Positions 4,990 to 45,747 of a stretch of DNA of 64,000 nucleotides are shown here, in pieces. The notes below the pieces were generated by a model, which was given only the letters and a program-made list of their open reading frames with translations, was not told where the DNA came from and searched no databases. The position numbers were made by a program, and so were the translations under genes. Every line of letters starts with the position of its first letter. Positions within the stretch are counted from its first letter, which is position 1. The DNA comes from Macrostomum lignano (Eukaryota). The DNA is taken from the NCBI GenBank assembly GCA_002269645.1, contig NIVC01000100.1, forward strand, positions 1-64,000. Reading direction: 5' to 3'.

Positions 4990-6984
4990 ATGACAGCCAA
5001 GTACCATGTACTTTTACTGCTTGTACGGTGCTGGCAACCCTATGTCCGTGTGTTGAGGTGCGACTAACCATGGCCAACGGTGCTTAACTTACTATCGTGT
5101 TAATCCTACTAGCTAGCAACACAATAACGCCTGGAAATCTTAGCCTTCCTCCCGCAGGCGCTCACTAGCTGCAGTCAATTTGTCCGCTCCTCCGGGCCAA
5201 TCCAGCTCGACCCGACCGTCAGTAGTTTCTTCATCAGCGAGCCCGGCTCAGCCTCCATCCAAGACTGCCTGCTCAGCTGCCGGTCGAAGGGGTGTGTCGC
5301 AGTCAGCCTGCTGCGGGCCAGCCGCATCTGCCAGCTGCTCTTCGTCGAGGACGCCTCGCGGACTGCCGGATCGCCGCGCAGCCACGCGTGGAGGTCACTG
5401 GGATCCGAGGCTGGCGCCGAGGTGTGGAAGGCGGTCGACATCGACAGCATCATCGACTCCAGGAGGCTCAACATCACGCTGGAGTTTTCAAGTGAGTCGC
5501 CTGATTAATTCAATAAAGTTTAAAGCAATGAAGGCGTTTTAGAAAAGTGAGTTGGCGGATTCGACGTCCTAACACTCGAGCGAGTTAAGCAGGATTGGCT
5601 GCTGGCCTTGCAAGCTTGTTGGTGCATTTTATTCGATTTTGGGAGCCTGCGAATCTTCTAAGAAACACTAGGGATGCCAGCTACAAAGAGGATACCAGCT
5701 ACAGAGGAGGCGCCAGCTACAGAGGGTACAGAGGGGGCGCCAGCTACAGAGGGGGCGCCAGCTACAGAGGGGGCGCCAGCTACAGAGGGGGCGCCAGCTA
5801 CAGAGGGGGCGCCAGCTACAGAGGGGGCGCCAGCTACAGATGGGGCGCCAGCTACAGAGGGGGCGCCAGCTACAGAGGGGGCGCCAGCTACAGAGGGGGC
5901 GCCAGCTACAGAGGGGGCGCCAGCTACAGAAGAGGCGCCAGCTACAGAGGGATGCCAGCTACAGAGAAGATGCCAGCTACAGAGAGGATGCCAGCTACAG
6001 AGGGGGGCGCCAGCTACAGAGGAGGCGCCAGCTACAGAGGGGGCGCCAGCTACAGAGGGGACTGCAAAACTGCAAAACCCGCAGACTCGAGCACAGGTAC
6101 GAACGGCTCCATCCTGCAGCTGTCAATCAACGTGACAGGCTGCTATCGAATTAAGGCAGCAGGAGCCGCTGGCGGGTTCAACAGTTTCCACAATCGAGTC
6201 GGCGGCAGAGGCGCCTTCGCAGCTGGACGCTTCAAACTCGCTGCCGGAGCGCGACTGTCAATCGTGGTGGGCCAGGCTGGCGGCCCGACAACGCTTGGCA
6301 ACGCTGGTGCTGGCGGAGGCGGTGGTAGCTTCGTGTACATGACTGGGAACGGCCAGCTGCTGCTGGCGGCAGGCGGCGGTGGCGGCGCCTCATCCTGGGC
6401 TTCAGGTGAGAAGCGGGTCTTATCTTCGAAAACTATAGCCAGGGTCATAAAAAGCATTTTCTCTTCTTTCGGCAACAACAGGCTGTCAAGGACTGGCCGC
6501 CAGCACTGGTGGCGACTCGAACGGCGGTAACAAGCTGAACACTGGCTACGGCGGCAAAAACGGCCAGCCTGGCAACAACGGCAACGGCAGCAATCCGGAC
6601 TTCGACGGCGGCTGCGGCGCCGGCTGGCTGGGCATGGCGCCCCGACGAACCAATGCCGGGCACGGAGACTCTGGCGGTGATCGCAGCGTCGGTTGGATCG
6701 GCGGCGCGGCTGGCAGCGGCGGCGGCGGTGGCGGCGACGGCGGGTTTGGCGGCGGCGGCGGAGGTGGACGCTCAGTTGGCGCGGCTGGCGCTGGTGGCGG
6801 CTACAGCGGCGGAGGCGCCGGGACCGGCGCTTATCACTCCGGCGGCGGAGGCGGCTCTGTCTGCGGCGACGGTGTCACCGGTGGCAGCGACTGCATCCTC
6901 ATGGATGGCGACGTCATGGACGGCTCAACCGTTCAAGGCCGGGTGACGCTTCAGCTTCTGCCAGACGCTGAGTCAGCCTGCTGA
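4990..6984 (+). CDS. Secreted protein: signal peptide + PAN/apple-like domain + ALK/LTK-type glycine-rich domain; no TM or kinase
   Basis: Exons 4990-5022 (MTAKYHVLLLL), 5158-5491 (SIQDCLLSCRSKGCVAVSLLRASRICQLL, PAN-like Cys spacing), 6085-6405 (GCYRIKAAGAAGG...GGRGAFAAGRFKLAAGARLSIVVGQAG...GGGGGSFVY...LLLAAGGGGGA) and 6482-6984 (GGCGAGW...GGFGGGGGG...GAGGGYSGG...GGGGGS, stop); all junctions GT-AG and phase-consistent. Exon 1 is the least certain. Confidence 0.85.
5671..6061 (+). repeat. 18-bp minisatellite (GGGGCGCCAGCTACAGAG)n in intron 2 of the glycine-rich gene
   Basis: About 21 tandem units read directly; the same unit occurs at 19328-19468 and 33372-34270. Confidence 0.95.
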
Positions 6985-12837: not shown

Positions 12838-13065
12838 GATCACAGACCAGACACTTATCTGTGCTTTCTGGCTGAGAATCGGTATCCAAGTGAAAACTTA
12901 TTGCGGCTCAAAAGTATTTGAAACCAGGAAATTAATAGAAATTCGTTTGCCAAATTCGAATTCTAAATAGTAAATGCATTTTTTTAATTCCTGAGCATTC
13001 CGTGCCTGGCTTGAAAATAATTTTAATTCTTTTTTTCATTTAGAACGAAGAAAGTTTATAGAATT

Positions 13066-13793
<728 letters not shown>

Positions 13794-17500: not shown

Positions 17501-17840
17501 GCCGGTTGCCTGCATAAAATAACAACTAAATTCTGTAAAACACTGGCCTAAGTAAGTCTCTGTAAAATGATTCACAATGGACAAATTCACTTTTGCCTTC
17601 AGCTTGTAGCAACTAAATTCATAACCATATCGAAACCTGTACCCCCAGGTAGAAATAGACAATATATAGTAACATAAAAGTCATCTACAGACATCCCAGA
17701 ATTTTTATTACCTTGTGTAGTAGACGGCAATGACTTACAGAATGCTGCATTCAAATGAATGGTCGCTAAAAATATTGCAGACATTGGCATTCACGATAAA
17801 AGAAACGAAGTACTAAAATGTAATTTTGAAAGAAGACACA

Positions 17841-18060
17841 TTGGCGCCCACTTCAGCACACAGTGGCGCCCACCGCTTCAGCACACGATGGCGCCCACCG
17901 CTTCAGCACACAGTGGCGCCCAGTTCAGGACACAGTGGCGCCCACCGCTTCAGCACACAGTGGCGCCCAGTTCAGGACACAGTGGCGCCCACTTCAGCAC
18001 ACGATGGCGCCCACCGCTTCAGCACACAGTGGCGCCCAGTTCAGGACACAGTGGCGCCCA
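17841..18060. repeat. Short array of the 25-bp GTGGCGCCCACCGCTTCAGCACACA satellite
   Basis: Same unit and orientation as the 26376-31069 array. Confidence 0.95.
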
Positions 18061-25922: not shown

Positions 25923-26375
25923 CAAATACACCTTATACGATAAACTTTAAGCATCTAGAAACGATCAATATTATAGTTTTTTAAAAGCAAAACAATTTTG
26001 TTTACTAGAGTTTCACAACTCTGTAGCGTTAGTTTAAAGCTATTTTTGCTTTTACTCAACCGGGTAAGGCGTGTGTCACCGGGTCAAGGTCAGGTGAGCC
26101 GGTGGTTAAAAAAGCCGTTACAAAAGAGCAGCAACTGAGCAGCTGTTTCACTATCCTGGCATTTCCCTTTTCCTGGTTTGCGTGACCCAGCGCTTCGGTC
26201 GCAGGGCATTGAGTAGAACAGACAATATTTAGCACTGATTGATTTATTACCCGATTCTCTAAAATGCTTTGGCTTGGCATTTTTTTATAACTGAACAGGG
26301 CCTTCATGGCCTGCGTTGCTTGCTGGAGTAGCCTGTGAGTTGCAGAGCCCACCTCCAGTGACTGCCACTTAAAAA

Positions 26376-29300
26376 CACAGTGGCGCCCACCGCTTCAGCA
26401 CACAGTGGCGCCCACCACTTCAGGACACACTGGCGCCCACCGCTTCAGCACACAGTGGCGCCCACCGCTTCAGCACACAGTGGCGCCCACCGCTTCAGCA
26501 CACAGTGGCGCCCACCGCTTCAGCACACACTGGCGCCCACCGCTTCAGCACACAGTGGCGCCCACCACTTCAGGACACTGTGGCGCCCACCACTTCAGAA
26601 CACAGTGGCGCCCACCGCTTCAGAACACAGTGGCGCCCACCGCTTCAGGACACTGTGGCGCCCACCGCTTCAGAACACAGTGGCGCCCACCGTTTCAGAA
26701 CACAGTGGCGCCCACCGCTTCAGGACACTGTGGCGCCCACCGCTTCAGAACACAGTGGCGCCCACCGCTTCAGGACACTGTGGCGCTCACCGCTTCAGCA
26801 CACAGTGGCGCCAACCACTTCAGGACACACTGGCGCCCACCGCTTCAGCACACAGTGGCGCCCACCGCTTCAGCACACAGTGGCGCCCACCGCTTCAGCA
26901 CACACTGGCGCCCACCGCTTCAGCACACAGTGGCGCCCACCACTTCAGGACACTGTGGCGCGCACCACTTCAGGACACTGTGGCGCCCACCGCTTCAGAA
27001 CACAGTGGCGCCCACCGCTTCAGGACACTGTGGCGCCCACCACTTCAGGACACTGTGGCGCCCACCGCTTCAGAACACAGTGGCGCCCACCGCTTCAGGA
27101 CACTGTGGCCCCCACCACTTCAGGACACTGTGGCGCCCACCGCTTCAGGACACTGTGGCGCCCACCACTTCAGGACACTGTGGCGCCCACCGCTTCAGAA
27201 CACAGTGGCGCCCACCGCTTCAGGACACAGTGGCGCCCACCGCTTCAGGACACTGTGGCGCCCACCGCTTCAGAACACAGTGGCGCCCACTGTTTCAGAA
27301 CACAGTGGCGCCCACCGCTTCAGAACACAGTGGCGCCCACCGCTTCAGAACACAGTGGCGCCCACCGCTTCAGAACACAGTGGCGCCCACCGCTTCAGAA
27401 CACAGTGGCGCCCACCACTTCAGGACACAGTGGTGCCCACCGCTTCAGAACACAGTGGCGCCCACCGCTTCAGAACACAGTGGCGCCCACCACGTCAGGA
27501 CACTGCGGCGCCCACCACTTCAGCACACAGTGGCGCCCACCACTTCAGGACACTGTGGAGCCCACCGCTTCAGAACACAGTGGCGCCCACCACTTTAGGA
27601 CACTGTGGCGCCCACCGCTTCAGGACACTGTGGCGCTCACCGCTTCAGCACACAGTGGCGCCCACCACTTCAGGACACTGTGGCGCCCACCGCTTCAGCA
27701 CACAGTGGCCCCCACCACTTCAGGACACTGTGGAGCCCACCACTTCAGGACACTGTGGCGTCCACCGCTTCAGCATACAGTGGCGCCCACCACTTCAGGA
27801 CACACTGGCGCCCACCGCTTCAGCACACAGTGGCGCCCACCGCTTCAGCACACAGTGGCGCCCACCGCTTCAGCACACAGTGGCGCCCACCGCTTCAGCA
27901 CACACTGGCGCGCACCGCTTCAGCACACACTGGCGCCCAGTTCAGGACACAGTGGCGCCAACCGCGCCTACCACTTCAGCACACAGTGGCGCCCACCGCT
28001 TCAGGACACAGTGGCGCCCACCGCGCCTACCACTTCAGGACACAGTGGCGCCCACCGCTTCAGGACACACTGACGCCCAGTTCAGGACACAGTGGCGCCA
28101 ACCGCGCCTACCACTTCAGGACACAGTGGCGCCCACCGCTTCAGGACACAGTGGCGCCCACCGCGCCTACCACTTCAGGACACAGTGGCGCCCACCACTT
28201 CAGGACACACTGGCGCCCAGTTCAGGACACAGTGGCGCCAACCGCGCCACCACTTCAGGACACAGTGGCGCCCACCGCTTCAGGACACAGTGGCGCCCAC
28301 CGCGCCTACCACTTCAGGACACAGTGGCGCCCACCGCTTCAGGACACACTGGCGCGCACCGCTTCAGCACACACTGGCGCCCACCGCTTCAGCACACAGT
28401 GGCGCCCACCACTTCAGGACACTGTGGCGCCCACCGCTTCAGAACACAGTGGCGCCCACCACTTCAGGACACTGTGGCGCCCACCGCTTCAGGACACTGT
28501 GGCGCCCACCACTTCAGGACACTGTGGCGCCCACCACTTCAGAACACAGTGGCGCCCACCGCTTCAGAACACAGTGGCGCCCACCGCTTCAGGACACTGT
28601 GGCGCCCACCGCTTCAGAACACAGTGGCGCCCACCGTTTCAGAACACAGTGGCGCCCACCGCTTCAGAACACAGTGGCGCCCACCGCTTCAGAACACAGT
28701 GGCGCCCACCGCTTCAGAACACAGTGGCGCCCACCGCTTCAGCACACAGTGGCGCCCACCACTTCAGGACACAGTGGCGCCCACCGCTTCAGAACACAGT
28801 GGCGCCCACCGCTTCAGAACACAGTGGCGCCCACCACTTCAGGACACTGTGGCGCCCACCGCTTCAGCACACAGTGGCGCCCACCGCTTCAGGACACTGT
28901 GGCGCCCACCGCTTCAGCACACAGTGGCACCCACCACTTTAGGACACTGTGGCGCCCACCGCTTCAGGACACTGTGGCGCCCACCGCTTCAGCACACAGT
29001 GGCGCCCACCACTTCAGGACACTGTGGCGCACACCGCTTCAGCACACAGTGGCGCCCACCGCTTCAGGACACAGTGGCGCCCACCGCTTCAGCACACAGT
29101 GGCGCCCACCATTTTCAGGACACTGTGACGCCCACCGCTTCAGCACACAGTGGCGCCCACCACTTCAGGACACTGTGGCGCCCACCGCTTCAGGACACAG
29201 TGGCGCCCACCGCTTCAGCACACAGTGGCGCCCACTTCAGCACACAGTGGCGCCCACCGCTTCAGCACACAGTGGCGCCCACCGCTTCAGCACACAGTGG

Positions 29301-31069
29301 CGCCCACCGCTTCAGCACACACTGGCGCGCACCGCTTCAGCACACACTGGCGCCCAGTTCAGGACACAGTGGCGCCAACCGCGCCTACCACTTCAGCACA
29401 CAGTGGCGCCCACCGCTTCAGGACACAGTGGCGCCCACCGCGCCTACCACTTCAGGACACAGTGGCGCCCACCGCTTCAGGACACACTGACGCCCAGTTC
29501 AGGACACAGTGGCGCCAACCGCGCCTACCACTTCAGGACACAGTGGCGCCCACCGCTTCAGGACACAGTGGCGCCCACCGCGCCTACCACTTCAGGACAC
29601 AGTGGCGCCCACCGCTTCAGGACACACTGGCGCCCAGTTCAGGACACAGTGGCGCCAACCGCGCCACCACTTCAGGACACAGTGGCGCCCACCGCTTCAG
29701 GACACAGTGGCGCCCACCGCGCCTACCACTTCAGGACACAGTGGCGCCCACCGCTTCAGGACACACTGGCGCGCACCGCTTCAGCACACACTGGCGCCCA
29801 CCGCTTCAGCACACAGTGGCGCCCACCACTTCAGGACACTGTGGCGCCCACCACTTCAGGACACTGTGGCGCCCACCGCTTCAGAACACAGTGGCGCCCA
29901 CCACTTCAGGACACTGTGGCGCCCACCGCTTCAGGACACTGTGGCGCCCACCACTTCAGGACACTGTGGCGCCCACCACTTCAGAACACAGTGGCGCCCA
30001 CCGCTTCAGCACACAGTGGCGCCCACCACTTCAGAACACAGTGGCGCCCACCGCTTCAGAACACAGTGGCGCCCACCGCTTCAGGACACTGTGGCGCCCA
30101 CCGCTTCAGAACACAGTGGCGCCCACCGTTTCAAACCACAGTGGCGCCCACCGCTTCAGGACACTGTGGCGCCCACCGCTTCAGAACACAGTGGCGCCCA
30201 CCGCTTCAGGACACTGTGGCGCTCACCGCTTCAGCACACAGTGGCGCCAACCACTTCAGGACACACTGGCGCCCACCGCTTCAGCACACAGTGGCGCCCA
30301 CCGCTTCAGCACACAGTGGCGCCCACCGCTTCAGCACACACTGGCGCCCACCGCTTCAGCACACAGTGGCGCCCACCACTTCAGGACACTGTGGCGCGCA
30401 CCACTTCAGGACACTGTGGCGCCCACCGCTTCAGAACACAGTGGCGCCCACCGCTTCAGGACACTGTGGCGCCCACCACTTCAGGACACTGTGGCGCCCA
30501 CCGCTTCAGAACACAGTGGCGCCCACCGCTTCAGGACACTGTGGCCCCCACCACTTCAGGACACTGTGGCGCCCACCGCTTCAGGACACTGTGGCGCCCA
30601 CCACTTCAGGACACTGTGGCGCCCACCGCTTCAGAACACAGTGGCGCCCACCGCTTCAGGACACAGTGGCGCCCACCGCTTCAGGACACTGTGGCGCCCA
30701 CCGCTTCAGAACACAGTGGCGCCCACTGTTTCAGAACACAGTGGCGCCCACCGCTTCAGAACACAGTGGCGCCCACCGCTTCAGGACACACTGGCGCCCA
30801 GTTCAGGACACAGTGGCGCCAACCGCGCCACCACTTCAGGACACAGTGGCGCCCACCGCTTCAGGACACAGTGGCGCCCACCGCGCCTACCACTTCAGGA
30901 CACAGTGGCGCCCACCGCTTCAGGACACACTGGCGCGCACCGCTTCAGCACACAGTGGCGCCCACCGCGCCTACCACTTCAGGACACAGTGGCGCCCACC
31001 GTTTCAGGACACATTGGCGCCCACCGCGCCTACCACTTCAGCACACAGTGGCGCCCACTTCAGCACAGG
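26376..31069. repeat. 4.7-kb satellite of a 25-bp unit (GTGGCGCCCACCGCTTCAGCACACA) with higher-order duplications
   Basis: About 190 units; rare variants recur at fixed offsets of 3436 bp and 1417 bp. Confidence 0.98.
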
Positions 31070-32337: not shown

Positions 32338-35007
32338 TTATTGCAACTGAGTTTCATACCGCCGACCACGTGACTCGGCGTCATCCTCGATAAACAACTC
32401 CAGCTGTTGAACTTCAACGTGATTCGGGTCGTCGCAATCTGAGGCGCCTTCGACAACAGAGCGGCACCTGCTGTTGCAGCCTGTTCGGCAGTGTGGCGGC
32501 AAGCTTGCTGTCGGCGCTAGAAGCGAGTCCCGACTGTACAGAGTCTGGAAGCGTTTCAGTTGCAGGTCGGCTGCATCAATTCCAGAGCCTAGTAGCGGCT
32601 CTCGGCACACCTGCAGTCGGGCCATCTGCAGCTTCAGCCGATGACAAACCGCCAAGGAGGTGATCAGAATGACTAGACAGAGGGCCACACTGCCAGCAAG
32701 GCTGTACAGCAGCCACACGCCGTCAGGGTAGAGGCCGAATCTGCGGAGTAGCAACGATTCGATGGAGGATACGTCGGTACCGACTTGAAGACTGTTCAAA
32801 GTTGGACAGACAGCAGGCGGTGTTGAGGCCGCAGTCTCTGACTCTTTTCTTGCCGTTGTTGACGCTTTGCCAGTTGGTGAACAGCTTGATTGGTGCATGG
32901 AATCCAGCGACACCTGACAGCTGGTGAAGGTGACCAGCAGGTGCGCCGAGCTGCCCAAGCAGCGGTGTCGCCGCACCGTCTCGCAGATGGCCGCGTCAGT
33001 CGCCGGAGCCGGTGGACACCCGGCGAAGTGCAGCCGCACGGTGACGTTCTCGGGGCCGCAGAGGCCGTCGTCGGAGGCGGGCAGGTACGCGAACAGCTTG
33101 TTGTCGCGCAGGTCGATGAGGCTGAGCTGCCGGTTGGAGGCGAAGGCCCGTTCGAGCCTGCCCAGCGTGCGGAACTGGTTGTCGAGGGCGTACAGCTCGA
33201 AGAGGCTGACGGCGCCCTGCGGGAGTTCAACCAACGAGATTGGGGCTTTAATGTCCAGAGTCTTGGCTTTGAAATGGCTGGGTGAAGTAGCCTCAGTTGC
33301 ATTAGTTGCGTGATTGGCAAACTTTTAGTACATCTTGAATTTTGTCAGGAGCTGCTGTTTAACTGGTGCCACCTGTGTAGCTGGCACCCTCTGTAGCTGG
33401 CATCCCCTCTGTAGCTGGCGCCCCCTCTGTAGCTGGCGCCCCTCTGTAGCTGGCGCCCCTCTGTAGCTGGCGCCCCTCTGTAGCTGGCGCCCCTCTGTAG
33501 CTGGCACCCTCTGTAGCTGGCACCCTCTGTAGCTGGCACCCTCTGTAGCTGGCACCCTCTGTAGCTGGCATCCCCTCTGTAGCTGGCGCCCCTCTGTAGC
33601 TGGCGCCCCTCTGTAGCTGGCACCCTCTGTAGCTGGCATCCCCTCTGTAGCTGGCACCCTCTGTAGCTGGCATCCCGTCTGTAGCTGGCATCCCCTCTGT
33701 AGCTGGCGCCCCTCTGTAGCTGGCGCCCCTCTGTAGCTGGCACCCTCTGTAGCTGGCACCCTCTGTAGCTGGCATCCCTCTGTAGCTGGCGCCCCTCTGT
33801 AGCTGGCATCCCCTCTGTAGCTGGCATCCCCTCTGTAGCTGGCATCCCCTCTGTAGCTGGCATCCCCTCTGTAGCTGGCATCCCCTCTGTAGCTGGCATC
33901 CCCTCTGTAGCTGGCGCCCCTCTGTAGCTGGCATCCCCTCTGTAGCTGGCGCCCCTCTGTAGCTGGCATCCCCTCTGTTGCTGGCACCCTTTGTAGCTGG
34001 CATCCCCTCTGTATCTGGCACCCTCTGTTGCTGGCACCCTCTGTAGCTGGCATCCCCTCTGTAGCTGGCGCCTCTCTGTAGCTGGCATCCCCTCTGTAGC
34101 TGGCACCCTCTGTAGCTGGCATCCCCTCTGTAGCTGGCGCCCCTCTGTAGCTGGCATCCCCTCTGTTGCTGGCACCCTCTGTAGCTGGCATCCCCTCTGT
34201 AGCTGGCATCCCCTCTGTAGCTGGTGCCCCCCTCTGTTGCTGGTGCCCCTCTCTGTTGCTGGTGCCCCCTCTCTTCCTCAGGAGAAATTGCACCGTTGGG
34301 CTCCCAGCACCCCCTAGCAACACGGGAAGAATGGCAGCCTGAGCCAGTCACCTGCAGAGCCCGGGGTCCCAGCACCCCCTAGCAACACGAGGCAAATGGC
34401 AGCCTGAGCCAGTCACCTGCAGAGCCCGGGGTCCCAGCTGACTCAGCTGGTTGCCGCTCAGCTTCAGCGTCCTCAGCGATCCGCAGGCGGCCAGCAGGCC
34501 GTCCGGCAGCCTCTCGATGCGGTTGTCGCTGAGGTCGAGCGACTCGAGACTGCCGCAGCCGATCAGAGCTCGCTGGCTGAGGTCCCGAACTCGATTCCTG
34601 GCCAGACTGAGCTGCCGCAGCCGTTTGTCGCACACGTCGGGCCCAACGGTCGTTAAATTTCCGTCGAGAATCTCCATCGATGACAGGTTCGGTAGCTGAG
34701 CAGCGTGTCCGGACTCGAGCTCGGGACCTTGCCAGCCGATGACCTTCAAGTGTTCAACCGAGTCGCAGCCAACGAGGCCCCGACCGGGAGAGGCGGCCGA
34801 CGCTGGCCAGGAGGCGGCACTCTGGAAGTTGAGCACCAGAGAGGCGGTGTCGGGTGAGCAGGAGACGTCCAGAGCGCCGCCAACCGGACAGAACTGCAAG
34901 CCAGTCCAATTGTAGCAAGTCATCTTCGCCTCAACCGATTGGCTACCGCTAAACACCAGGGTCAGCAGCAGCATAAACTGAATCAGCTTTCGCAATAGTC
35001 CGGCCAT
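32338..35007 (-). CDS. LRR-containing type I transmembrane receptor, copy B, about 489 aa, apparently intact
   Basis: Exons 35007-34417 and 33216-32338; signal peptide MAGLLRKLIQFMLLLTLVFSG, LRRs near-identical to copy A, stalk, TM VWLLYSLAGSVALCLVILITSLAVC, cytoplasmic tail without a recognisable domain. Confidence 0.88.
33372..34270 (-). repeat. GCCAGCTACAGAGGG minisatellite (17-18-bp units) in intron 1 of LRR copy B
   Basis: About 50 units, sense to the host gene. Confidence 0.96.
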
Positions 35008-36315: not shown

Positions 36316-36577
<262 letters not shown>

Positions 36578-36882
36578 CCCTCTTTAGGTCCGCAGTCATG
36601 CGCCAGGTTCTCTATCTGGCTCTTGACGTAAAAAAAATTGCTGACCTCTGGCTAAAAGCATCAGAAACTTTCAACTGTTGCTAGTTTTATCCCGGAACTA
36701 ACAGTTCATCTGTTTATCCAAGAATTATCCCCGCTAAATACTAGCAATTAGCGCTTAGCGTCACCAATTTTAATCCCATACTATGCAATACAAAAAATAC
36801 TATATAATCGGCTGCTATCAGCTGGATCTGTTTGAAAACTGTTTCTCTGTTTCTCAGCAAGACTCAAATCTAAATTTAAACA

Positions 36883-38277
36883 ATGCGTCTAGGATGCTTG
36901 ATGTTGGTTTTTCTGCTTCTGGCGACCAAAGCGATGGGAACTTCCGAGGTAAGCAATTAGGTGAGGAGAGGAGAGGAGAGGAGAGGAGAGGAGAGGAGAG
37001 GAGAGGAGAGGAGGGGAGAGGAGAGGAGAGGAGAGAGAGAGGAGGGGAGGGAGAGAGTAGAGGAGAGGAGAGAAGAGGAGAAGAGACCAGACCAAAAGCA
37101 GAATATGTAGCTGTGAACACTGCAGGCGGAGTTCGAATCGCGGTACAGAGACTGCATCCTGCAGGACACGAACTGCCCGAATAACAGTAGCGTATACAGC
37201 TACCAGCGACTCCTGCCAACTCTGCAGCTGATGCAGCGAAAGAAGCCACCAAGAGAGTGCGACTGCAACATCCAAAGTGAGGGCTGTGTCAGACGGTGCT
37301 TCTATGCCTTCCGACTCCAGCTGGACATTTTGGCTGCGGAGTTCAGGGCTGGCAATGATATGGCTAGGCGTGAGGTGAGTTCGACCCTGTCCTGAAGTGT
37401 TCGACCCCATCCTGAAGTGTTCGACCCTATCCTGAAGTGTTCGACCCTATCCTGAAGTGTTCGAACCCATCCTGAAGTGTTCGACCCTATCCAGAAGTGT
37501 TCGACCCCATCCTGAAGTGTTCGACCCTATCCTGAAGTGTTCGACCCCATCCTGAAGTGTTCGACCCCATCCTGAAGTGTTCGACCCTATCCTGAAGTGT
37601 TCGACCCTATCCTGAAGTGTTTGACCCTGTCCTGAAGTGTTCGACCCTATCCTGAAGTGTTCGACCCTATCCTGAAGTGTTCGACCCTATCCTGAAGTGT
37701 TTGACCCTGTCCTGAAGTGTTCGACCCTATCCTGAAGTGTTCGACCCCATCCTGAAGTGTTCGACCCTATCCTGAAGTGTTCGACCCCATCCTGAAGTGT
37801 TCGACCCTATCCTGAAGTGTTCGACCCTATCCTGAAGTGTTCGACCCCATCCTGAAGTGTTCGACCCTATCCTGAAGTGTTCGACCCCATCCTGAAGTGT
37901 TCGACCCTATCCTGAAGTGTTCGACCCTATCCTGAAGTGTTCGACCCTATCCTGAAGTGTTCAACCCCATCCTGAAGTGTTTGGCTCTTTCGTAAAGTTC
38001 CAGTGCTGGCTTTGATAAACAAAAATAACGAACTCCCCAAAATTTGCAGCAGTTTACTAATTTCGCCCGTAGCAACATGAATCGCCTTAGGCCTTGCATC
38101 CTCGAGGGCAGGAACTGTCAGCAAGTGTATGGCCCGTCGCTCAACTACATGTCCGACTGGTTGCGCTACGAGCTCCGGATTAACTACATGCCTCCGGTGT
38201 GTAACTGCGACGTGAACAATGAAAACTGCGGCAGGCCGTGCATGTACGCCATCCTAAAGTCTGAGGCCGGATTTTGA
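36883..38277 (+). CDS. Secreted ~180-aa protein with two tandem copies of a 6-cysteine module
   Basis: Exons 36883-36948 (MRLGCLMLVFLLLATKAMGTSE, signal peptide), 37126-37374 and 38050(or 38053)-38277; all phase 0, GT-AG. Each of the last two exons encodes C-x6-C-x27-C-x-C-x6-C-x3-C. Confidence 0.85.
36961..37085. repeat. (GAGAG)n microsatellite in intron 1 of the Cys-module gene
   Basis: Read directly. Confidence 0.93.
37375..37982. repeat. 20-bp minisatellite (GTGTTCGACCCTATCCTGAA)n starting at the intron 2 donor site
   Basis: About 30 units; the first unit overlaps GTGAGT. Confidence 0.97.
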
Positions 38278-39458
38278 GGCTCTGCAACTCGATGAAAACT
38301 TATAATAACCATGCAGTAATTGGTGTATTAACAATCGATGGGAATATTTGGATCGGGTAATAAAATATTCCTTTAAAAATCCTAAAATGCTATGTATAAT
38401 TCCTTTTTGCAACCTAGTTGGTATGCAAGCTTTTAAATTAATCATGGATACGGAAATCAGACTTGCGAGACTGAAGATTTTCTCGTTGGCATAGCCGAGT
38501 TTAATTTAATCCCTGGGGCATCAATTTGATCATTTGACGCCATCAGGTACATCACTACGACTCGTCACGCTTTGCACCAGATTATTGATGAACGTCTGGA
38601 ACCTGGCTGCCGTCTAGCCTTCTTGCCCCTTCTGCTGCGACCTTGAGTCCAGATTTTAAAGCCTGTCTTGTCGATGAAAATCAAGTGAATCTCAGGGGCA
38701 CAATCCAGTCAACCGCAGTGATGAGCTGCTTGACCAAAACATTCGGCTTACTGTTGACTCACAAACTTGCAACTCCGGATCGGCTTAACGAAGCTTAGGC
38801 TTCATTTCTTGCAAAGTTAGCAGTGGGTTTTCTTTGATCCATTCCAGTAGGTGCTGCACATGAGCGTCAGTAAGTTTCACTTGACGAGCACCTCCTCGAC
38901 TTGGTCGGTTCCGGCGATCAGTGGGCGAGTTTGTACCGCATTCGAATCGAGTAAACATTAGGAGATGGCTTCAATCACCATTTTTGTGGCGATGCGGAGC
39001 AGCGTTGTCTTGCAGCAGCTGATTGGGCCCTGTGAGTGCAAGCTGGGCCTTTTGTCGCGAATGGCTCTTTGCACCTTGCGCAGCACTTCCAAATAATAGT
39101 CACCATTGACTGTCTGGCCGGCAGGAACAGCCTGATCGAAGATGATGCCCTCGCGATCAAAGAAAGTCACATGCATGATTTTCAGCTGAGCAATTCTCCT
39201 TGCAGCCTTCACTGGCCTCGGAGAGCCAGGCTGGCACCAAGATGCGCTCTGCCGCTTCAGTTTCAAGCCACGATTCTCTGAAGAAACTGAAGTCCCTCGT
39301 GCCTGTGTCTTTGCAGATGAGCTGCGCTGAGAGTTGTGAGACCTTCAGCTCCTCTGACGACAGGATGTGAGGCACCCACTTTGCGCAAATCTTCCTGACT
39401 CCAAGATCTTCAGTCAGAACTTTATGGATTTTGTCATGAGACACGCCAGTATACTCAG

Positions 39459-39514
39459 CGGGGGCTTACGGCCGACCTTCAAGAGGTGCCCCTGTTCTTA
39501 ACTAACGGACCGTA
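39459..39514 (+). ncRNA. Predicted compact HDV-like self-cleaving ribozyme at the LINE 5' end
   Basis: P1 (C)GGGGGC/GCCCCU(G); P2 UACGG-CCG/CGG(A)CCGUA; P3 ACC/GGU with 7-nt L3 UUCAAGA; J4/2 CUAA; P4 reduced to a short linker. Predicted cleavage coincides with the TSD boundary. Confidence 0.75.
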
Positions 39515-42500
39515 CCACCACCGAGCCTGCGAAGAAGACCAAGAGAACGCGTCGAACTCCGAAAACCTTCTATCCGTCATGCGACTCCGCGGCGGCAATA
39601 GTGACATTTCAGTCCACCGCCGCCGGCCGCGCAGGAGACACAGGAGAGCAGCGTCGCGCAAAGCCGAGCCGGACCAAGAGCTCCTTGTGCAGTTTAACTG
39701 CAATGGCATCAAAAGCCGTAATACGGAGCTGGCCCACAGGCTGGCCTCCCTGCGCCCCGCCGCTATACTCCTTCAGGAAACCAAGCTTAAGAAAGAAGAA
39801 GATTATAACCCGCCGCGGGGATACGTGGTGGCCTCCAGGGAAGATGGAGTACATAACGCCGGCCCCGATGACCGCGCTGTCGTGACACCTGCTCACCCAA
39901 ATCGGCCACCCGACGCTAACGGTACAGGCGCCGCCGGGACACGACGCCGTACCAACCCGCGCTGCCGGCTGAGATTCCCAGGACTCCGCGAAAACTGGTG
40001 CGCCGGATGTCGCAGCGGCCGTACCGCCTGTAGCGTCCGTTTCACACCATGGCATGGCGCAGACAACCAATCTGTTCAAACCAGTGCACCCGGACGAGAA
40101 ATCACCAGCACGCCACCGCCAGCCCAGTCCACTATCCCAAAAACCAACAAAAAAATTACAGGACGGGGAGGTACTATGGTGCTTGTCCGCGATGACGTCC
40201 AGTACGACAGACTCAAAGTCGATAGAGAACACGACCTCCTGGACGTTGCCGCCTGCCGCATCCGCCTCAAAGGACAGCAGCCGATCGTGATAGCATCTAT
40301 CTATGCACCGCCATCCAGCTGCCAACGCCCCGATAACACCTGGCAACCCAGCTTCACCAATCTCCCGACTACCGGTAGAGTCATCCTCGGAGGCGACTAC
40401 AACGCACACGGAAGCTGGGACCGCCACATTGATGAAGATCTCAGAGGCCAGACCGTCGACGAGTGGGTCGCCCGCAATGGGCTCGTCATCTGCAATACCA
40501 CCTGCCACACACGCACCTGCCCCAGTACTGGCCGCCTCAGTAGCCCAGACGTGACCATCTGTAGTAGCACCATTGCCGGATCCATCACGGACTCCTGGAA
40601 GACGCTACCAGACTGGGGAAGCGATCACCTGCCGATCGTTTTCGGCCTCCCAGCCTCTAACGCCGGAAAGACCCGTCACTGCGGGCAAAAACGCTGGATC
40701 TATAAGAAGGCAGACTGGGGAGCCTTCAGGGAGTCGCTAAATACCTGGGCAGAATCCGAACGCAACGACACCACCTTAAACACAGAGGCCACACGCCTTG
40801 CCGAAGCCATCCTGAACGCAGCAAGACTTGCCATCCGCGCAGCTCCGGGAAAAAGACGAGACGCCTGCCGTTCTGGAACGACGCCTGCGAGGAGGCCTCC
40901 AAAGCTACACGTTCCGCGAGACAATCCGCAGAAAAAGAACCGACACCAGAAAATATTATTGCCGCAAACAGAGCCCGCCACAACGCCTCAGGCTGCCTCC
41001 GGAGGGAGAAAGAAGCCTTCCTGCTCGACAAAGCGGCAAATTTCAGCCAGGACTCGGACATTTTTGGCTTACTCCGCGCTATGAGAGGCGATGGTTTTAA
41101 AACTCCGGACCCGGCTGCCATTGTCAGGGCCGCCTCCCCAGACTCGCCGGAGCGCACCGCACGCACTAACAAAGAGAAGGCCGAACTCTTTTGCCAACTC
41201 TACGCCGAAGTTAGCCGAGTCCCCAGACGAAAAAATGACTCGGCCATCAGATACGAAGCGAACGAGGCCACTACGCCTATGGGTGACCCCCAAACAGACG
41301 GCCCGGACGCCCCTTTCGAGATCGACGAGCTCCGCGCCGCTATCCGATGTCTCAAATCAGGGAAGGCTGTGGGAACCGACGGTGTCTCCAACGAGATGCT
41401 TAAACGCCTCCCGCCGGCCGCTGACAAAGCCTTACTCAGCCTCATCAACCGCACCTAGCGGGAGGGCAAAACACCTACCAGCTGGCGAATTGGCACCATT
41501 ATACCGATCCAGAAAAAAGGGAAAGACGCCGCATCACCGGGCAACTACCGCCCCGTCGCACTTACCAGCTGCATCGCCAAGTGCGCGGAGCGCATGGTTC
41601 TGGCTCGTCTTAACTATGACCTGGAGAGCCGTGGCGGTCTCTCGCTCACTCAAGCTGGTTTTCGTCGCGGTCGTAGCACCGAGGAACAGCTCGCGCGAGT
41701 CTGCCAAGCCATTTTTGACGGCCTCGAGAGTCTACCGGCGCTACGCAGCATCCTCTGCCTCCTCGACTTCTGCCGAGCGTATGACAGAGTATGGCGCCTG
41801 GCCCTGTATGCCAAAATGCACCGCATGGGCATCCCCAAGCGCATCATCCGCTGGATCCGCGGCTTCCTGTCGGACCGTCACAACGCAGTCCGCTGGGTTA
41901 ACGCCACGAGCCGCAACAGAGTTTTCCGCGAAGGTCTGCCACAGGGCAGTGTGCTAGCGCCCACGCTGTGGAATATCTATGTCAACGATTTAGCCCAAGC
42001 AGTCGCCGAGGCGAACCCTTTGGTCAACCTCAGTCTCTACGCCGATGACTCGGCCTTACTGGCGACCGCTCGCACACTCGACATCTGTGCCAGAGAACTC
42101 CAACCAGCCCTGGATGCAGTGGCCGACTGGTGCCGAGATTGGAAAGTCTCCATTAGCACTGGGAAATGCTGCTACTCCACCTTCACTCTAGCGGCAAATG
42201 AAAACAACGGCAAACGGAGAGTGAACCTCCAGATCAACGGCGACAAGCTTGCCTTCGATCCAACTCCGACCTTCCTGGGACTCAGTCTTGACGACAGCCT
42301 AAGTTTCAGCCACCATGCATCAAAGATCCGTAAAAAGATGGCCGCCCGCAGAAGACCTCTCACTGCCCTCGCTACCAGATCGGCCGGTGCGGACAGTCAG
42401 ATCCTCCGCATGGCTTACATCGCCACCGTTCGCTCTGTTGCCGACTACGCGTGCGGGGTCTGGGGGTCCTTCACTGCAGCCAGCTCTAAGCTGCTGATCG

Positions 42501-43807
42501 ACCGCCAACAGCACAGCTGTGCGCGGATCATCACTGGGTGCCTCCAACTTACTCACATCCGGGACCTGCTTGCGGTGGCGAACCTGTCGCCTTTCAGCCA
42601 TCTGGTGCTACAGCGCAGTGCGACACTCAGAGAAAGAATCCTACGTCTCCCGCAGGACACCCCAGCACTTCAGGTCGCCATAATGGACACCCGACCACGA
42701 CTGAAGAATCGAGCCTTTGAGAGCCACCAGAGAACACCGAGAGACCCAAAGGACATCGTCACCGTTCTCCACGACTACCAGCGAGAACACCGTGGTTGCT
42801 GGCGCCGCGTTAGCCAAGAGCTCGACAGACAGGGGTTGCTCAACGGCCCCACCAGGGAGCCCGCTCCGCAGCCCCAGCCGCCGTGGACGGTCCACGAAGC
42901 GATCACCTTCGACCTCAGTTTGGCTACGCAGTGCAGCCGCAGCCAGCCCCAGAGCCTCCGCAGCGATACTGCACTGAGGTACCTCGAGGAGCGCGGCTCC
43001 CACCCGGTCAGCGTTTGGACTGACGGCTCGGCCGCCGGCGGCACATCGGACGGCACCAGCGCAGCGGTGATCATCACCCCATGCTGGGGTCGGGTCGTCA
43101 CCAGCGCTGCAGGGAACATCTGCAGCAGCACCCAGGCGGAACTTCAAGCCATACTGCTTGCCATCCAGAATACCAGAGAGCATCAATGTATCGACATCTT
43201 TACTGACTCCCAGGCGGCCATTTACAGCATCATGGCGGGCCAGCGCAGCAACAGCAGAATCGTCTCCGAAATTTGGAACCAGAGTAACGATCACTCCATC
43301 CGCATCACCTGGAAACCGGCTCACTGCGGCATCCCCATGAACGAACGCGCAGATAGGGCGGCTAGATTGGCGACCGCAGATCAGAGCGACCATGGTGCCC
43401 CCATCATGGCAGCCAGCGCTTACCTCTGCCGGAAAAGACGTGATCTAGACCTCGAGCTTTGGGGCCGTAAGGCGCCATGGCCAAGACTCCCAACCTTGCC
43501 GAGGAAACTTGAGGTCCTGGTCAACCAGCTCCGCGCCGGCTGCAGCAACCTTGCCGCCGCCACCAGACTCCGACTCGGCCTGTCCGACTCCGACGTGTGC
43601 CCGGACTGCGGAGCTCGCGACACCGAGCAACACATTCTTTTCGACTGCCCACGAGGGTCTGCGGCCCGCCCCGGCGAACAAGACGCACTCCTGGTTGACG
43701 CGAGCCTCACCATCAACCTTCTTCGCAGGCTGGGGCGCATCTAGCGCCCCCGTCCCTTGCAGCCCAGCTGACATCGAGACGTGCGGTGCAGAGAGAGAGA
43801 GAGAGAG
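39460..43807 (+). mobile_element. Near-full-length Ingi-like non-LTR retrotransposon (single ORF: APE endonuclease, RT, RNase H, CCHC), mildly decayed
   Basis: 12-bp TSD AGTA(T/G)ACTCAGC (39448-39459, 43808-43819). Motifs QFNCNG, LLQETK, GGDYNAH, SDHLPI; YRPVALTS, LLDFCRAYD, GLPQGSVLAP, YADD; TDGS/AELQAI/TDSQ/HCGIPMNERAD; CPDC-x7-H-x4-C. (GA)n 3' tail; frameshift near 40835 and nonsense TAG 41456-41458; no ORF1. Clade assignment is by architecture. Confidence 0.92.
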
Positions 43808-44852: not shown

Positions 44853-45460
44853 TATTTACTTATATATTATTAAACCATACAATCCATTTCTAGTTGTAAG
44901 CTTTTGTCTATGGTCGGAAAGGTAGGAGCCCGTTTGCCCGATTGCCTGATACAAATTTCTGGATTAAACTTAGAGTTACAGATGCACTTGTGCTTGTAAA
45001 TTGAATTTAATGTAGTTCAATTGAGTATGTATGCATACGAGTAAGTGGTCAGTTTTTGACCATAGCAACACGCAGTTAATATTTTTCTAGTATAATATGC
45101 TTAATTAAACCAGAAACATAAGGTTTCGAAAGTTTTGCAGTTTCGAAGTTGAAGTTTATTATATTTGAAATTTTCAAAAATTTAACTGTACCTTAACTAA
45201 TAACAGGTTTTGTCAATCAGACTAAAGTTTTGAAAACTGTAACATTTGCAACACTGTCTGTCGGTCGGGTTGCTAAGAATTGCGTCAGCGACGGCAGAAG
45301 TACAAACTCCCAGTTTTCTCATCCTTCACGCACCTGTGAGGAAAGCAGCACGGTCTTAAGGGCATGAAATCCGTCACGCGGCAGATTTGAGTACTCGGGG
45401 TGCACCTGGAGTGTTGAATAGCGGTTTAGTGTAGGTGTTATTACTGACAGATAAACTGAC

Positions 45461-45747
<287 letters not shown>

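What the first reader, a model, noticed from the sequence alone, without database searches (positions are those of the whole stretch)
36883..38277. Secreted protein built from two exon-encoded copies of an unrecognised 6-Cys module
Seen: signal peptide, then CILQDTNC-x27-CDCNIQSEGCVRRCFYA and CILEGRNC-x27-CNCDVNNENCGRPCMYA. Cys spacing is identical (C-x6-C-x27-C-x-C-x6-C-x3-C), CIL..N, PP and YA are conserved, and there is one module per phase-0 exon. I do not recognise this pattern as a named domain. The gene is only partly visible in the ORF track. Inference: a lineage-specific disulfide-rich secreted module arisen by exon duplication.
Basis: partly seen in the sequence, partly recalled or inferred. 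Interest (0 to 1): 0.7.

Follow-up and report, generated by a model that had tools for sequence, protein, structure and literature searches.

The report
Flatworm secreted two-module cysteine-rich protein
This is a real small gene of the flatworm Macrostomum lignano that encodes a secreted protein built from two copies of a helical six-cysteine module matching no described domain; it is a typical lineage-restricted orphan whose function is still unknown.

Summary
A three-exon gene (36883-36948, 37126-37374, 38050-38277, + strand; GT..AG introns, all phase 0) encodes a 180-aa protein: a signal peptide plus two homologous modules, each with the Cys spacing C-x6-C-x27-C-x-C-x6-C-x3-C. The organism is Macrostomum lignano. 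The protein is already in UniProt as an uncharacterised entry (A0A1I8G7C1) with the same exon junctions. Two further M. lignano paralogue lineages share the design; the one whose locus I read (P0003/P0005) has the same exon layout. Module 1 is closer to module 1 of the paralogues than to its own module 2, so the exon duplication predates the family's expansion. No relative was found outside M. lignano. Pfam, PDB sequence search, hhalign against saposins, and Foldseek on an AlphaFold model (pLDDT 70, all-helical) all found nothing. UniProt's automatic "saposin B-type" name for one paralogue could not be reproduced. Function is only inferred: probably a disulfide-stabilised, non-enzymatic extracellular binding or signalling protein. 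Expression of this copy is unproven. Orphan secreted Cys-rich families are common in invertebrates, so interest is modest.

The parts
36801..36807 (+). TATA-box-like TATATAA, 76-82 nt upstream of the start codon
   Evidence: pattern scan; it is the only TATA[AT]A[AT] match in 36600-36883.
36883..36948 (+). Exon 1: 22 codons encoding the signal peptide MRLGCLMLVFLLLATKAMG|TSE, with likely cleavage after Gly19
   Evidence: The exon has the same 22-codon length as exon 1 of paralogue P0003. UniProt model P0001 starts at the in-frame Met7 (36901) but uses the same donor site.
36949..37125 (+). Intron 1 (177 nt, GT..AG, phase 0), mostly an (AGGAG)n microsatellite at 36959-37086
37126..37374 (+). 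Exon 2: module 1 (83 aa), with Cys spacing 6,27,1,6,3
37375..38049 (+). Intron 2 (675 nt, GT..AG, phase 0), filled by about 30 copies of a 20-bp minisatellite (GTTCGACCCTATCCTGAAGT) at 37379-37981
   Evidence: The equivalent intron in paralogue P0003 is only 83 nt.
38050..38277 (+). Exon 3: module 2 (75 aa) plus the TGA stop codon, with Cys spacing 6,27,1,6,3
38359..38364 (+). AATAAA polyadenylation signal, 82 nt after the stop codon

Best explanation
This is a genuine three-exon gene of Macrostomum lignano encoding a small secreted protein. The mature protein is about 161 aa and 18.9 kDa, with pI 8.3.

Shown:
- The protein consists of a signal peptide followed by two homologous modules, one per exon, each carrying six cysteines.
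- It belongs to a small paralogous family seen only in M. lignano. All members share the same layout of signal peptide, module and module; the exon structure is confirmed for the window gene and the P0003/P0005 lineage.
- The module duplication happened before the gene family diversified.

Inferred:
- Each module is predicted to be all-helical. It folds as a roughly three-helix unit held together by intramodule disulfides.
- Cys4-Cys5 form a local staple at the start of the last helix. This pair is lost together in module 2 of two paralogue lineages.
- Cys1 and Cys2 are tied to Cys3 and Cys6.
- The protein has no catalytic motifs, no membrane anchor and no conserved processing site. It most likely acts outside the cell as a stable, non-enzymatic binding or signalling protein released from a secretory (gland) cell. 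The paralogues diverge fast on a fixed scaffold.
For: - Gene structure and signals.
- An independent UniProt gene model (P0001) uses the same two junctions.
- Paralogue P0003/P0005 has the same three phase-0 exons (22-codon signal-peptide exon, then one module per exon) with short introns. Its NCBI model comes from a transcript-based annotation (PMC5730564).
- M1/M2 homology goes beyond the Cys scaffold, and M1-M1 and M2-M2 scores exceed M1-M2 scores across paralogues.
- Invariant residues across members only 31-34% identical to this protein include all the scaffold Cys, the I after Cys1, the N before Cys2, the P/E before Cys3, and R and Y-A around Cys6.
- Module 2 of P0003, P0005 and P0007 has lost Cys4 and Cys5 together.
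- The AlphaFold2 model built with the four-sequence alignment has pLDDT 70.1 and pTM 0.52, and is all-alpha.
- No known family matches by Pfam, PDB sequence search, hhalign or Foldseek.
- CDS GC3 is 0.70, similar to the paralogue's 0.74.
Against: - No transcript, proteomic or in situ evidence for this particular copy could be obtained. The transcript-based NCBI annotation yielded models for the paralogues, but none for this protein was present in the searched collection.
- The disulfide connectivity and the three-helix fold rest on a moderate-confidence model from only four sequences, plus one pattern of correlated Cys loss. I could not inspect model coordinates.
- The functional statement is an inference by exclusion.
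- UniProt automatically names paralogue P0003 a 'Saposin B-type domain-containing protein', so at least one profile method sees a saposin-like signal.
- pN/pS between the two near-identical P0003/P0005 copies is 0.75 from only 7 substitutions. That does not demonstrate purifying selection.
Confidence: 0.7

Rival explanations
1. The modules are highly diverged saposin-like (SAPLIP) domains. On this reading the protein is a lipid-binding or membrane-perturbing protein, for example digestive, lysosomal or antimicrobial, as in other flatworms.
For: UniRef names paralogue P0003 (A0A1I8GAE8) 'Saposin B-type domain-containing protein'. The module is all-helical, about 80 aa, has six Cys and sits in a secreted, mildly basic protein. 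The 27-residue gap between Cys2 and Cys3 resembles the saposin C2-C3 spacing seen in the reference alignment A4.
Against: - The Pfam models SapB_1, SapB_2 and Saposin hit none of the family members, even at E<=10. They hit the human reference domains at 1e-12 to 1e-15.
- hhalign of the module profile and of the full-length profile against human saposins A-D gives probabilities of 0.07% and 0.18%.
- Foldseek of the model against the PDB, which I know to contain many saposin-fold structures, returns nothing better than E=5.9.
- The Cys spacing 6,27,1,6,3 spans 49 residues. Saposins span about 75 residues between first and last Cys, with 2-3 residues after the first Cys and 5 before the last.
- The joint loss of Cys4 and Cys5 in paralogue module 2 does not fit the nested saposin connectivity. 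It would break two disulfides rather than one.
Confidence: 0.15
2. The protein is a prohormone. It is cleaved at the dibasic site RR103-104, which lies at the module boundary, to release two separate disulfide-rich peptide hormones of about 80 and 75 aa. This would be analogous to helical six-Cys neurohormones such as CHH/ITP.
For: There is a signal peptide. An RR lies two residues before the exon 2/3 junction. The module size and six-Cys, helical character are in the range of CHH/ITP-type hormones (my own knowledge).
Against: - The dibasic site at the boundary is not conserved. P0003, P0005 and P0007 have ...GKTDPTEIANAERQ... and ...GLTDPVEIENAERQ... there.
- The model predicts the boundary to lie within or between long continuous helices (H68-91 and H95-118 of P0001) rather than in an exposed linker.
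- There is no Pfam hit to Crust_neurohorm or any hormone family.
- There is no amidation signal.
Confidence: 0.07
3. This particular copy is not a functional gene. It could be a silent or decaying duplicate in a repeat-rich, recently duplicated genome, with its open reading frame merely not yet disrupted.
For: - The introns are swollen by micro- and minisatellites.
- The gene lies among transposon debris and satellites.
- No transcript-based NCBI model for this protein was found, although the paralogues have them.
- Another database copy, P0002, reads as garbled.
Against: - All three exons are intact, with canonical splice sites, a start codon, TATA and polyA signals, and all 12 scaffold cysteines.
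- GC3 is coding-like.
- The protein is only about 33% identical to its paralogues, yet keeps every invariant scaffold residue. That implies a long history under selection, not a recent dead copy.
- P0002 comes from the older ML2 assembly; PMC5730564 reports that its Mlig_3_7 assembly improves on ML2's accuracy, so P0002's frameshifts may be assembly errors.
Confidence: 0.08

Closest known systems
Saposin-like proteins (SAPLIP; Pfam SapB_1/SapB_2, PROSITE saposin B-type profile)
   Same: Secreted, all-helical module of about 80 residues with six cysteines, often found in tandem copies. The gap of about 27 residues between the second and third Cys is similar. One paralogue carries this name automatically in UniProt.
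   Different: There is no HMM, profile-profile or fold-search similarity. The Cys spacing after Cys3 is different and much more compact (x1, x6, x3 against roughly x10, x24, x5). The correlated loss of Cys4 and Cys5 argues for a different disulfide connectivity.
Orphan secreted proteins of M. lignano gland cells, e.g. the prostate-limited putative seminal fluid proteins Mlig-pro1-76 (Weber et al. 2018, PMC5977470)
   Same: Same organism. Both are small proteins with signal peptides and no homologues elsewhere. In that screen, 31 of 76 prostate-limited transcripts had no BLAST hit, and 38 of 65 translated candidates had a signal peptide.
   Different: No link between this gene and any Mlig-pro transcript could be established. 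The paper's held supplements contain no sequences. The resemblance is one of category only.
Helical disulfide-rich water-borne signalling proteins (Euplotes Er pheromones, Aplysia attractin) and helical six-Cys neurohormones (CHH/ITP/MIH). Comparison from my own knowledge, not tested beyond Pfam.
   Same: Small secreted helical bundles or hairpins locked by three disulfides. Sequences evolve fast on a fixed Cys scaffold, and the proteins act as non-enzymatic ligands.
   Different: The Cys spacings differ. Those proteins are single-domain (40-75 aa) rather than a two-module tandem. No sequence relationship was found (no Pfam hit).

Membership tests
Saposin-like proteins (SAPLIP) | Match to the Pfam SapB_1 (PF05184), SapB_2 (PF03489) or Saposin (PF20825) models | tested here: not met
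   There were 0 hits to these models at E<=10 or E<=1 for the whole protein, for each module and for P0002, P0003, P0005 and P0007. In the positive control, human saposins A and C hit at 5e-12 to 5e-15.
Saposin-like proteins (SAPLIP) | Profile-profile similarity to bona fide saposin domains | tested here: not met
   hhalign of A2 (four modules) against A4 (human saposins A-D) gave probability 0.07%. A3 (full length) against A4 gave 0.18%.
Saposin-like proteins (SAPLIP) | Six-Cys pattern C-x2/3-C ... C-x~10-C ... C-x5-C spanning about 75 residues, with nested disulfides C1-C6, C2-C5 and C3-C4 | tested here: not met
   The observed spacing is 6,27,1,6,3, spanning 49 residues, compared with A4. 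Connectivity was not measured, but the joint loss of Cys4 and Cys5 in paralogue module 2 is not what nested pairing predicts.
Saposin-like proteins (SAPLIP) | Saposin fold (compact bundle of 4-5 helices) | tested here: inconclusive
   Foldseek of the AF2 model against the PDB found no match (best E 5.9, TM 0.20). However, the model has only moderate confidence (pLDDT 70, pTM 0.52, four-sequence alignment).
Saposin-like proteins (SAPLIP) | Match to the PROSITE saposin B-type profile, the presumed source of UniProt's name for paralogue A0A1I8GAE8 | not testable with these tools
   The name was seen. No PROSITE profile scan is available here, so neither the score nor the matched region is known.
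CHH/ITP/MIH neurohormones (Pfam Crust_neurohorm) | Match to the family HMM and its six-Cys spacing | tested here: not met
   There was no Pfam hit at E<=10. The spacing differs from the CHH pattern as I recall it (own knowledge).
Macrostomum two-module six-Cys family (defined here: window gene, P0003/P0005, P0007) | Signal peptide followed by two modules with PCI[LV]xxxNC ... [PL]PxxCxC ... ExxCxRxCxYA motifs | tested here: met
   Alignments A2 and A3. phmmer of module 1 hit P0003 at E 1.8e-12.
Macrostomum two-module six-Cys family (defined here: window gene, P0003/P0005, P0007) | Three-exon structure with a 22-codon signal-peptide exon and one module per phase-0 exon | tested here: met
   Window gene. 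P0003 locus L001: exons 6001-6066, 6142-6405 and 6489-6740. The P0005 locus L002 aligns throughout. No DNA was available for P0007.

The most novel reading that the evidence does not exclude
The module is a structurally new disulfide-stapled three-helix domain that arose within Macrostomorpha. It has no homologue or fold analogue in Pfam or the PDB. The family would be a fast-evolving set of secreted ligands, for example seminal-fluid or other gland-derived proteins that act on a mating partner or on conspecifics.
Probability: 0.3. Interest if true: 0.45.

Novelty: new variant of a known kind. Interest (0 to 1): 0.3.

Why it matters
If the module is truly a new fold, it adds one more disulfide-rich helical mini-domain to the catalogue. 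It would also be a clean example of domain birth followed by exon duplication and gene-family expansion in a basal flatworm. If the family proves to be gland- or prostate-expressed, it would add candidates for the seminal-fluid and sexual-conflict work done in M. lignano. Otherwise it is one of many taxonomically restricted secreted Cys-rich proteins found in any invertebrate genome. It opens no long-standing question.

Tried and rejected
- **Profile search of the 5.8-billion-protein collection with the four-module alignment.** It returned nothing, not even the family's own members, so it says nothing about wider distribution.
Neither gave a result, so splicing of this copy is not directly confirmed.
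- **Single-sequence AlphaFold model (pLDDT 47).** Too poor to use. It was replaced by the four-sequence model.
- **P0004 (1,800-aa HYR-repeat adhesion-GPCR-like protein, E 2.5e-4).** Rejected as a spurious hit from a repetitive protein over a 34-residue stretch.
- **PDB profile hits (CYRI-B, a papain-like protease, CEBiP; E 0.56-1.5).** Chance level.
- **Weak Pfam hits to DUF7545 (E 0.17) and Tospo_nucleocap (E 0.012).** Both are far below their gathering thresholds and each appears in one paralogue only. Rejected.
- **P0006 (1,369 aa).** It is a chimeric gene model fusing this gene to the downstream mariner and LINE ORFs, not a second copy.
- **Metagenome scan.** No relatives.
- **Literature.** No paper or held supplement mentions Mlig029205. 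The Weber 2018 supplements lack sequences.
- **pN/pS between P0003 and P0005.** Only 7 substitutions, so it is inconclusive.
- **First attempt at that comparison.** It used an exon 3 start one base off and is superseded.

Full report
**1. Observation**

The stretch 36883-38277 on the + strand contains a compact three-exon gene.
- Exon 1 (36883-36948) has 22 codons, MRLGCLMLVFLLLATKAMGTSE, and is followed by GTAAGC.
- Exon 2 (37126-37374) has 83 codons. It is preceded by CTGCAG and followed by GTGAGT.
- Exon 3 (38050-38277) has 75 codons plus TGA and is preceded by TTTGCAG.
- All exon lengths are multiples of three, so both introns are phase 0.

The spliced product is 180 aa. Exons 2 and 3 each carry six cysteines with spacing 6,27,1,6,3. 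A six-frame pattern scan finds this spacing nowhere else in the 64-kb window.

The two modules are about 32-34% identical. Their local BLOSUM62 score is 79. Full shuffles give 26.5 +/- 5.2, and shuffles with the cysteines fixed in place give 35.3 +/- 8.7. None of 2000 shuffles reaches 79 in either test. The similarity is therefore real homology, not just a shared Cys count.

Other gene signals are present.
- A TATATAA lies at 36801-36807, and there is an in-frame stop upstream of the ATG.
- An AATAAA lies 82 nt after the stop codon.
- The N-terminus is hydrophobic and ends in A-M-G|T, and there is no later hydrophobic segment.
- CDS GC3 is 0.70, against 0.49 at first and 0.43 at second codon positions.

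The introns are inflated by an (AGGAG)n microsatellite and by about 30 copies of a 20-bp minisatellite. That is why an ORF track shows the gene only in part.

**2. Organism and database status**

The protein is 100% identical to UniRef A0A1I8G7C1, an 'Uncharacterized protein' of the free-living flatworm Macrostomum lignano (P0001).
- That model starts at the in-frame Met7 but uses exactly the two exon junctions derived here.
- I prefer the upstream ATG at 36883. It gives a charged n-region (Arg2) and makes exon 1 exactly 22 codons, as in the paralogue.
- P0006 (1,369 aa) is a chimeric model of the same locus, run on into the neighbouring mariner and LINE ORFs.
- P0002 is a garbled model of another copy that reads through the minisatellite intron.

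**3. Family**

phmmer of module 1 against 1.84 billion representatives found only P0001 and P0003, plus one spurious repetitive protein, P0004. A search with P0003 added P0007, which is 61% identical to P0003. P0005 is a near-identical second copy of P0003. All of these are M. lignano proteins.

All have a signal peptide followed by two modules (alignment A3). Although the other members are only 31-34% identical to this protein, the following are invariant:
- the scaffold cysteines;
- Ile after Cys1 and Asn before Cys2;
- Pro and Glu before Cys3, and a Glu between Cys4 and Cys5;
- Arg between Cys5 and Cys6, and Tyr-Ala after Cys6.

The P0003 locus (L001) has the same gene structure. Its exons are 6001-6066 (22 codons), 6142-6405 and 6489-6740. 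All are phase 0 with GT..AG introns, and the introns are only 75 and 83 nt. The BOX15_Mlig gene models in NCBI derive from a genome-guided transcriptome annotation (StringTie/TACO/TransDecoder; PMC5730564). I infer from this that the paralogue's splice pattern is RNA-supported.

Across paralogues, M1 scores higher against other M1s (119, 159) than against its own M2 (79). M2 behaves the same way (114, 101). The exon duplication therefore predates the divergence of the gene family.

A scan of JGI metagenome contigs found no relatives. The profile search of the large protein collection was uninformative.

**4. Is the module a known domain?**

- Pfam gives no hit at E<=10 for the whole protein, the paralogues or the isolated modules.
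- The PDB sequence search gives no hit for the single sequence, and only chance-level hits (E >= 0.56) for the profile.

One lead needed testing: UniRef calls P0003 a 'Saposin B-type domain-containing protein'. I presume this comes from the PROSITE profile, which I cannot run. I tested the lead in four ways.
- (a) The Pfam saposin models do not hit any family member, yet they hit human saposins A and C at 1e-12 to 1e-15.
- (b) hhalign of the module profile, and of the full-length family profile, against an alignment of human saposins A-D gives probabilities of 0.07% and 0.18%.
- (c) The AlphaFold2 model from the four-sequence alignment (pLDDT 70.1, pTM 0.52, all-alpha) has no Foldseek match in the PDB (best E 5.9, TM 0.20) or in BFVD.
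- (d) The Cys spacing is different and much more compact after Cys3.

I therefore do not file the module under SAPLIP. A very remote relationship cannot be excluded, because the model has only moderate confidence and the alignment is shallow.

**5. Anatomy and likely mechanism**

The model predicts roughly three helices per module. In P0001 numbering these are H16-29, H42-52 and H68-91 for module 1, and H95-118, H122-125/H130-143 and H157-171 for module 2. Cys1 lies at the end of the first helix. Cys3 and Cys4 lie just before the last helix, and Cys5 and Cys6 lie in its first turns.

In P0003, P0005 and P0007, module 2 has replaced Cys4 (by Tyr or Phe) and Cys5 (by Ala) together, while keeping Cys1, Cys2, Cys3 and Cys6. 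The simplest reading, which is an inference, is an intramodule Cys4-Cys5 staple plus two disulfides linking Cys1 and Cys2 to Cys3 and Cys6.

The mature protein is about 18.9 kDa with pI about 8.3. It has one N-glycosylation sequon (N41) and no anchor or retention signal. The RR at the module boundary is not conserved in the paralogues, which argues against prohormone processing.

My best-supported reading is a stable, non-enzymatic extracellular binding or signalling protein, released by a secretory cell type, with paralogues that diverge fast on a fixed scaffold. The target and the tissue are unknown. The literature shows only that orphan secreted proteins are common in this species. For example, 31 of 76 prostate-limited transcripts had no BLAST hit (PMC5977470). 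Nothing links this gene to those transcripts.

**6. Caveats**

- Expression of this particular copy is not shown. I could not retrieve a transcript contig, and no transcript-based NCBI model of this protein was in the collection.
- pN/pS between the P0003 and P0005 copies is 0.75, from 2 synonymous and 5 non-synonymous changes. That is too few to interpret.
- The disulfide map and the fold are predictions.

**7. Verdict**

This is a lineage-restricted secreted protein made of two exon-encoded copies of a six-Cys helical module that matches no described domain family.

It is not new to databases, since UniProt already holds it as an uncharacterised entry. It belongs to a very common category, the taxonomically restricted small secreted Cys-rich proteins. 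I rate it a new variant of a known kind, with interest about 0.3.

Noticed in passing
window 26375-31027: A 4.6-kb satellite array of 25-bp units (ACACAGTGGCGCCCACCGCTTCAGC; also scored at periods 50 and 75). It produces several spurious ORFs of up to about 1,000 aa in the ORF list. Related units also occur at 17835-18060.
   Followed up: no
window 32338-35007 (- strand): The upstream neighbour is a leucine-rich-repeat protein gene. The exon at 34348-35007 encodes a signal-peptide-like start plus LRR_8 repeats (Pfam E 1e-29). A further ORF at 32338-33234 has a hydrophobic, TM-like segment. The two are separated by an 18/34-bp minisatellite at 33372-34252.
   Followed up: partly
window 38958-39266 (- strand) and 39486-43744 (+ strand): Immediately downstream of the gene lie a mariner-type transposase fragment (Pfam Transposase_1, E 1e-13) and a non-LTR retrotransposon with endonuclease, RVT_1 and RNase H domains. 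UniProt model A0A1I8IJ90 (P0006, 1,369 aa) wrongly fuses the Cys-rich gene to these ORFs.
   Followed up: partly
window 36320-36574 and 45446-45747 (also 13065-13793): There are long tetranucleotide microsatellites of the same motif in opposite orientations: (TCTG)n just upstream of the gene, and (GACA)n, the reverse complement of a rotation of that motif, about 9 kb downstream. They bracket the gene together with the transposon block. The window as a whole is unusually rich in micro- and minisatellites (34 TRF rows with score >= 300). This fits the report that simple and tandem repeats make up 15% of the M. lignano genome (PMC5730564).
   Followed up: no
window 36883 vs 36901: The UniProt model of this gene starts at the second in-frame ATG (MLVFLLL...). 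The upstream ATG at 36883 gives a more canonical signal peptide (Arg in the n-region) and matches the 22-codon first exon of the paralogue. The database start is therefore probably six codons short.
   Followed up: partly
window 36889-37410 (- strand): A 173-aa antisense ORF overlaps exons 1-2 and the microsatellite intron. It is low-complexity (SSPLL repeats). It was not searched for homologues. I take it to be a by-product of the repeat and of the GC3-rich sense frame.
   Followed up: no
L001 517-3624 (- strand): The P0003 paralogue locus also sits next to a retroelement, a Ty3/gypsy-like LTR polyprotein with RVT_1, RNase H and integrase domains. Both family members examined therefore lie in transposon-rich surroundings.
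   Followed up: no
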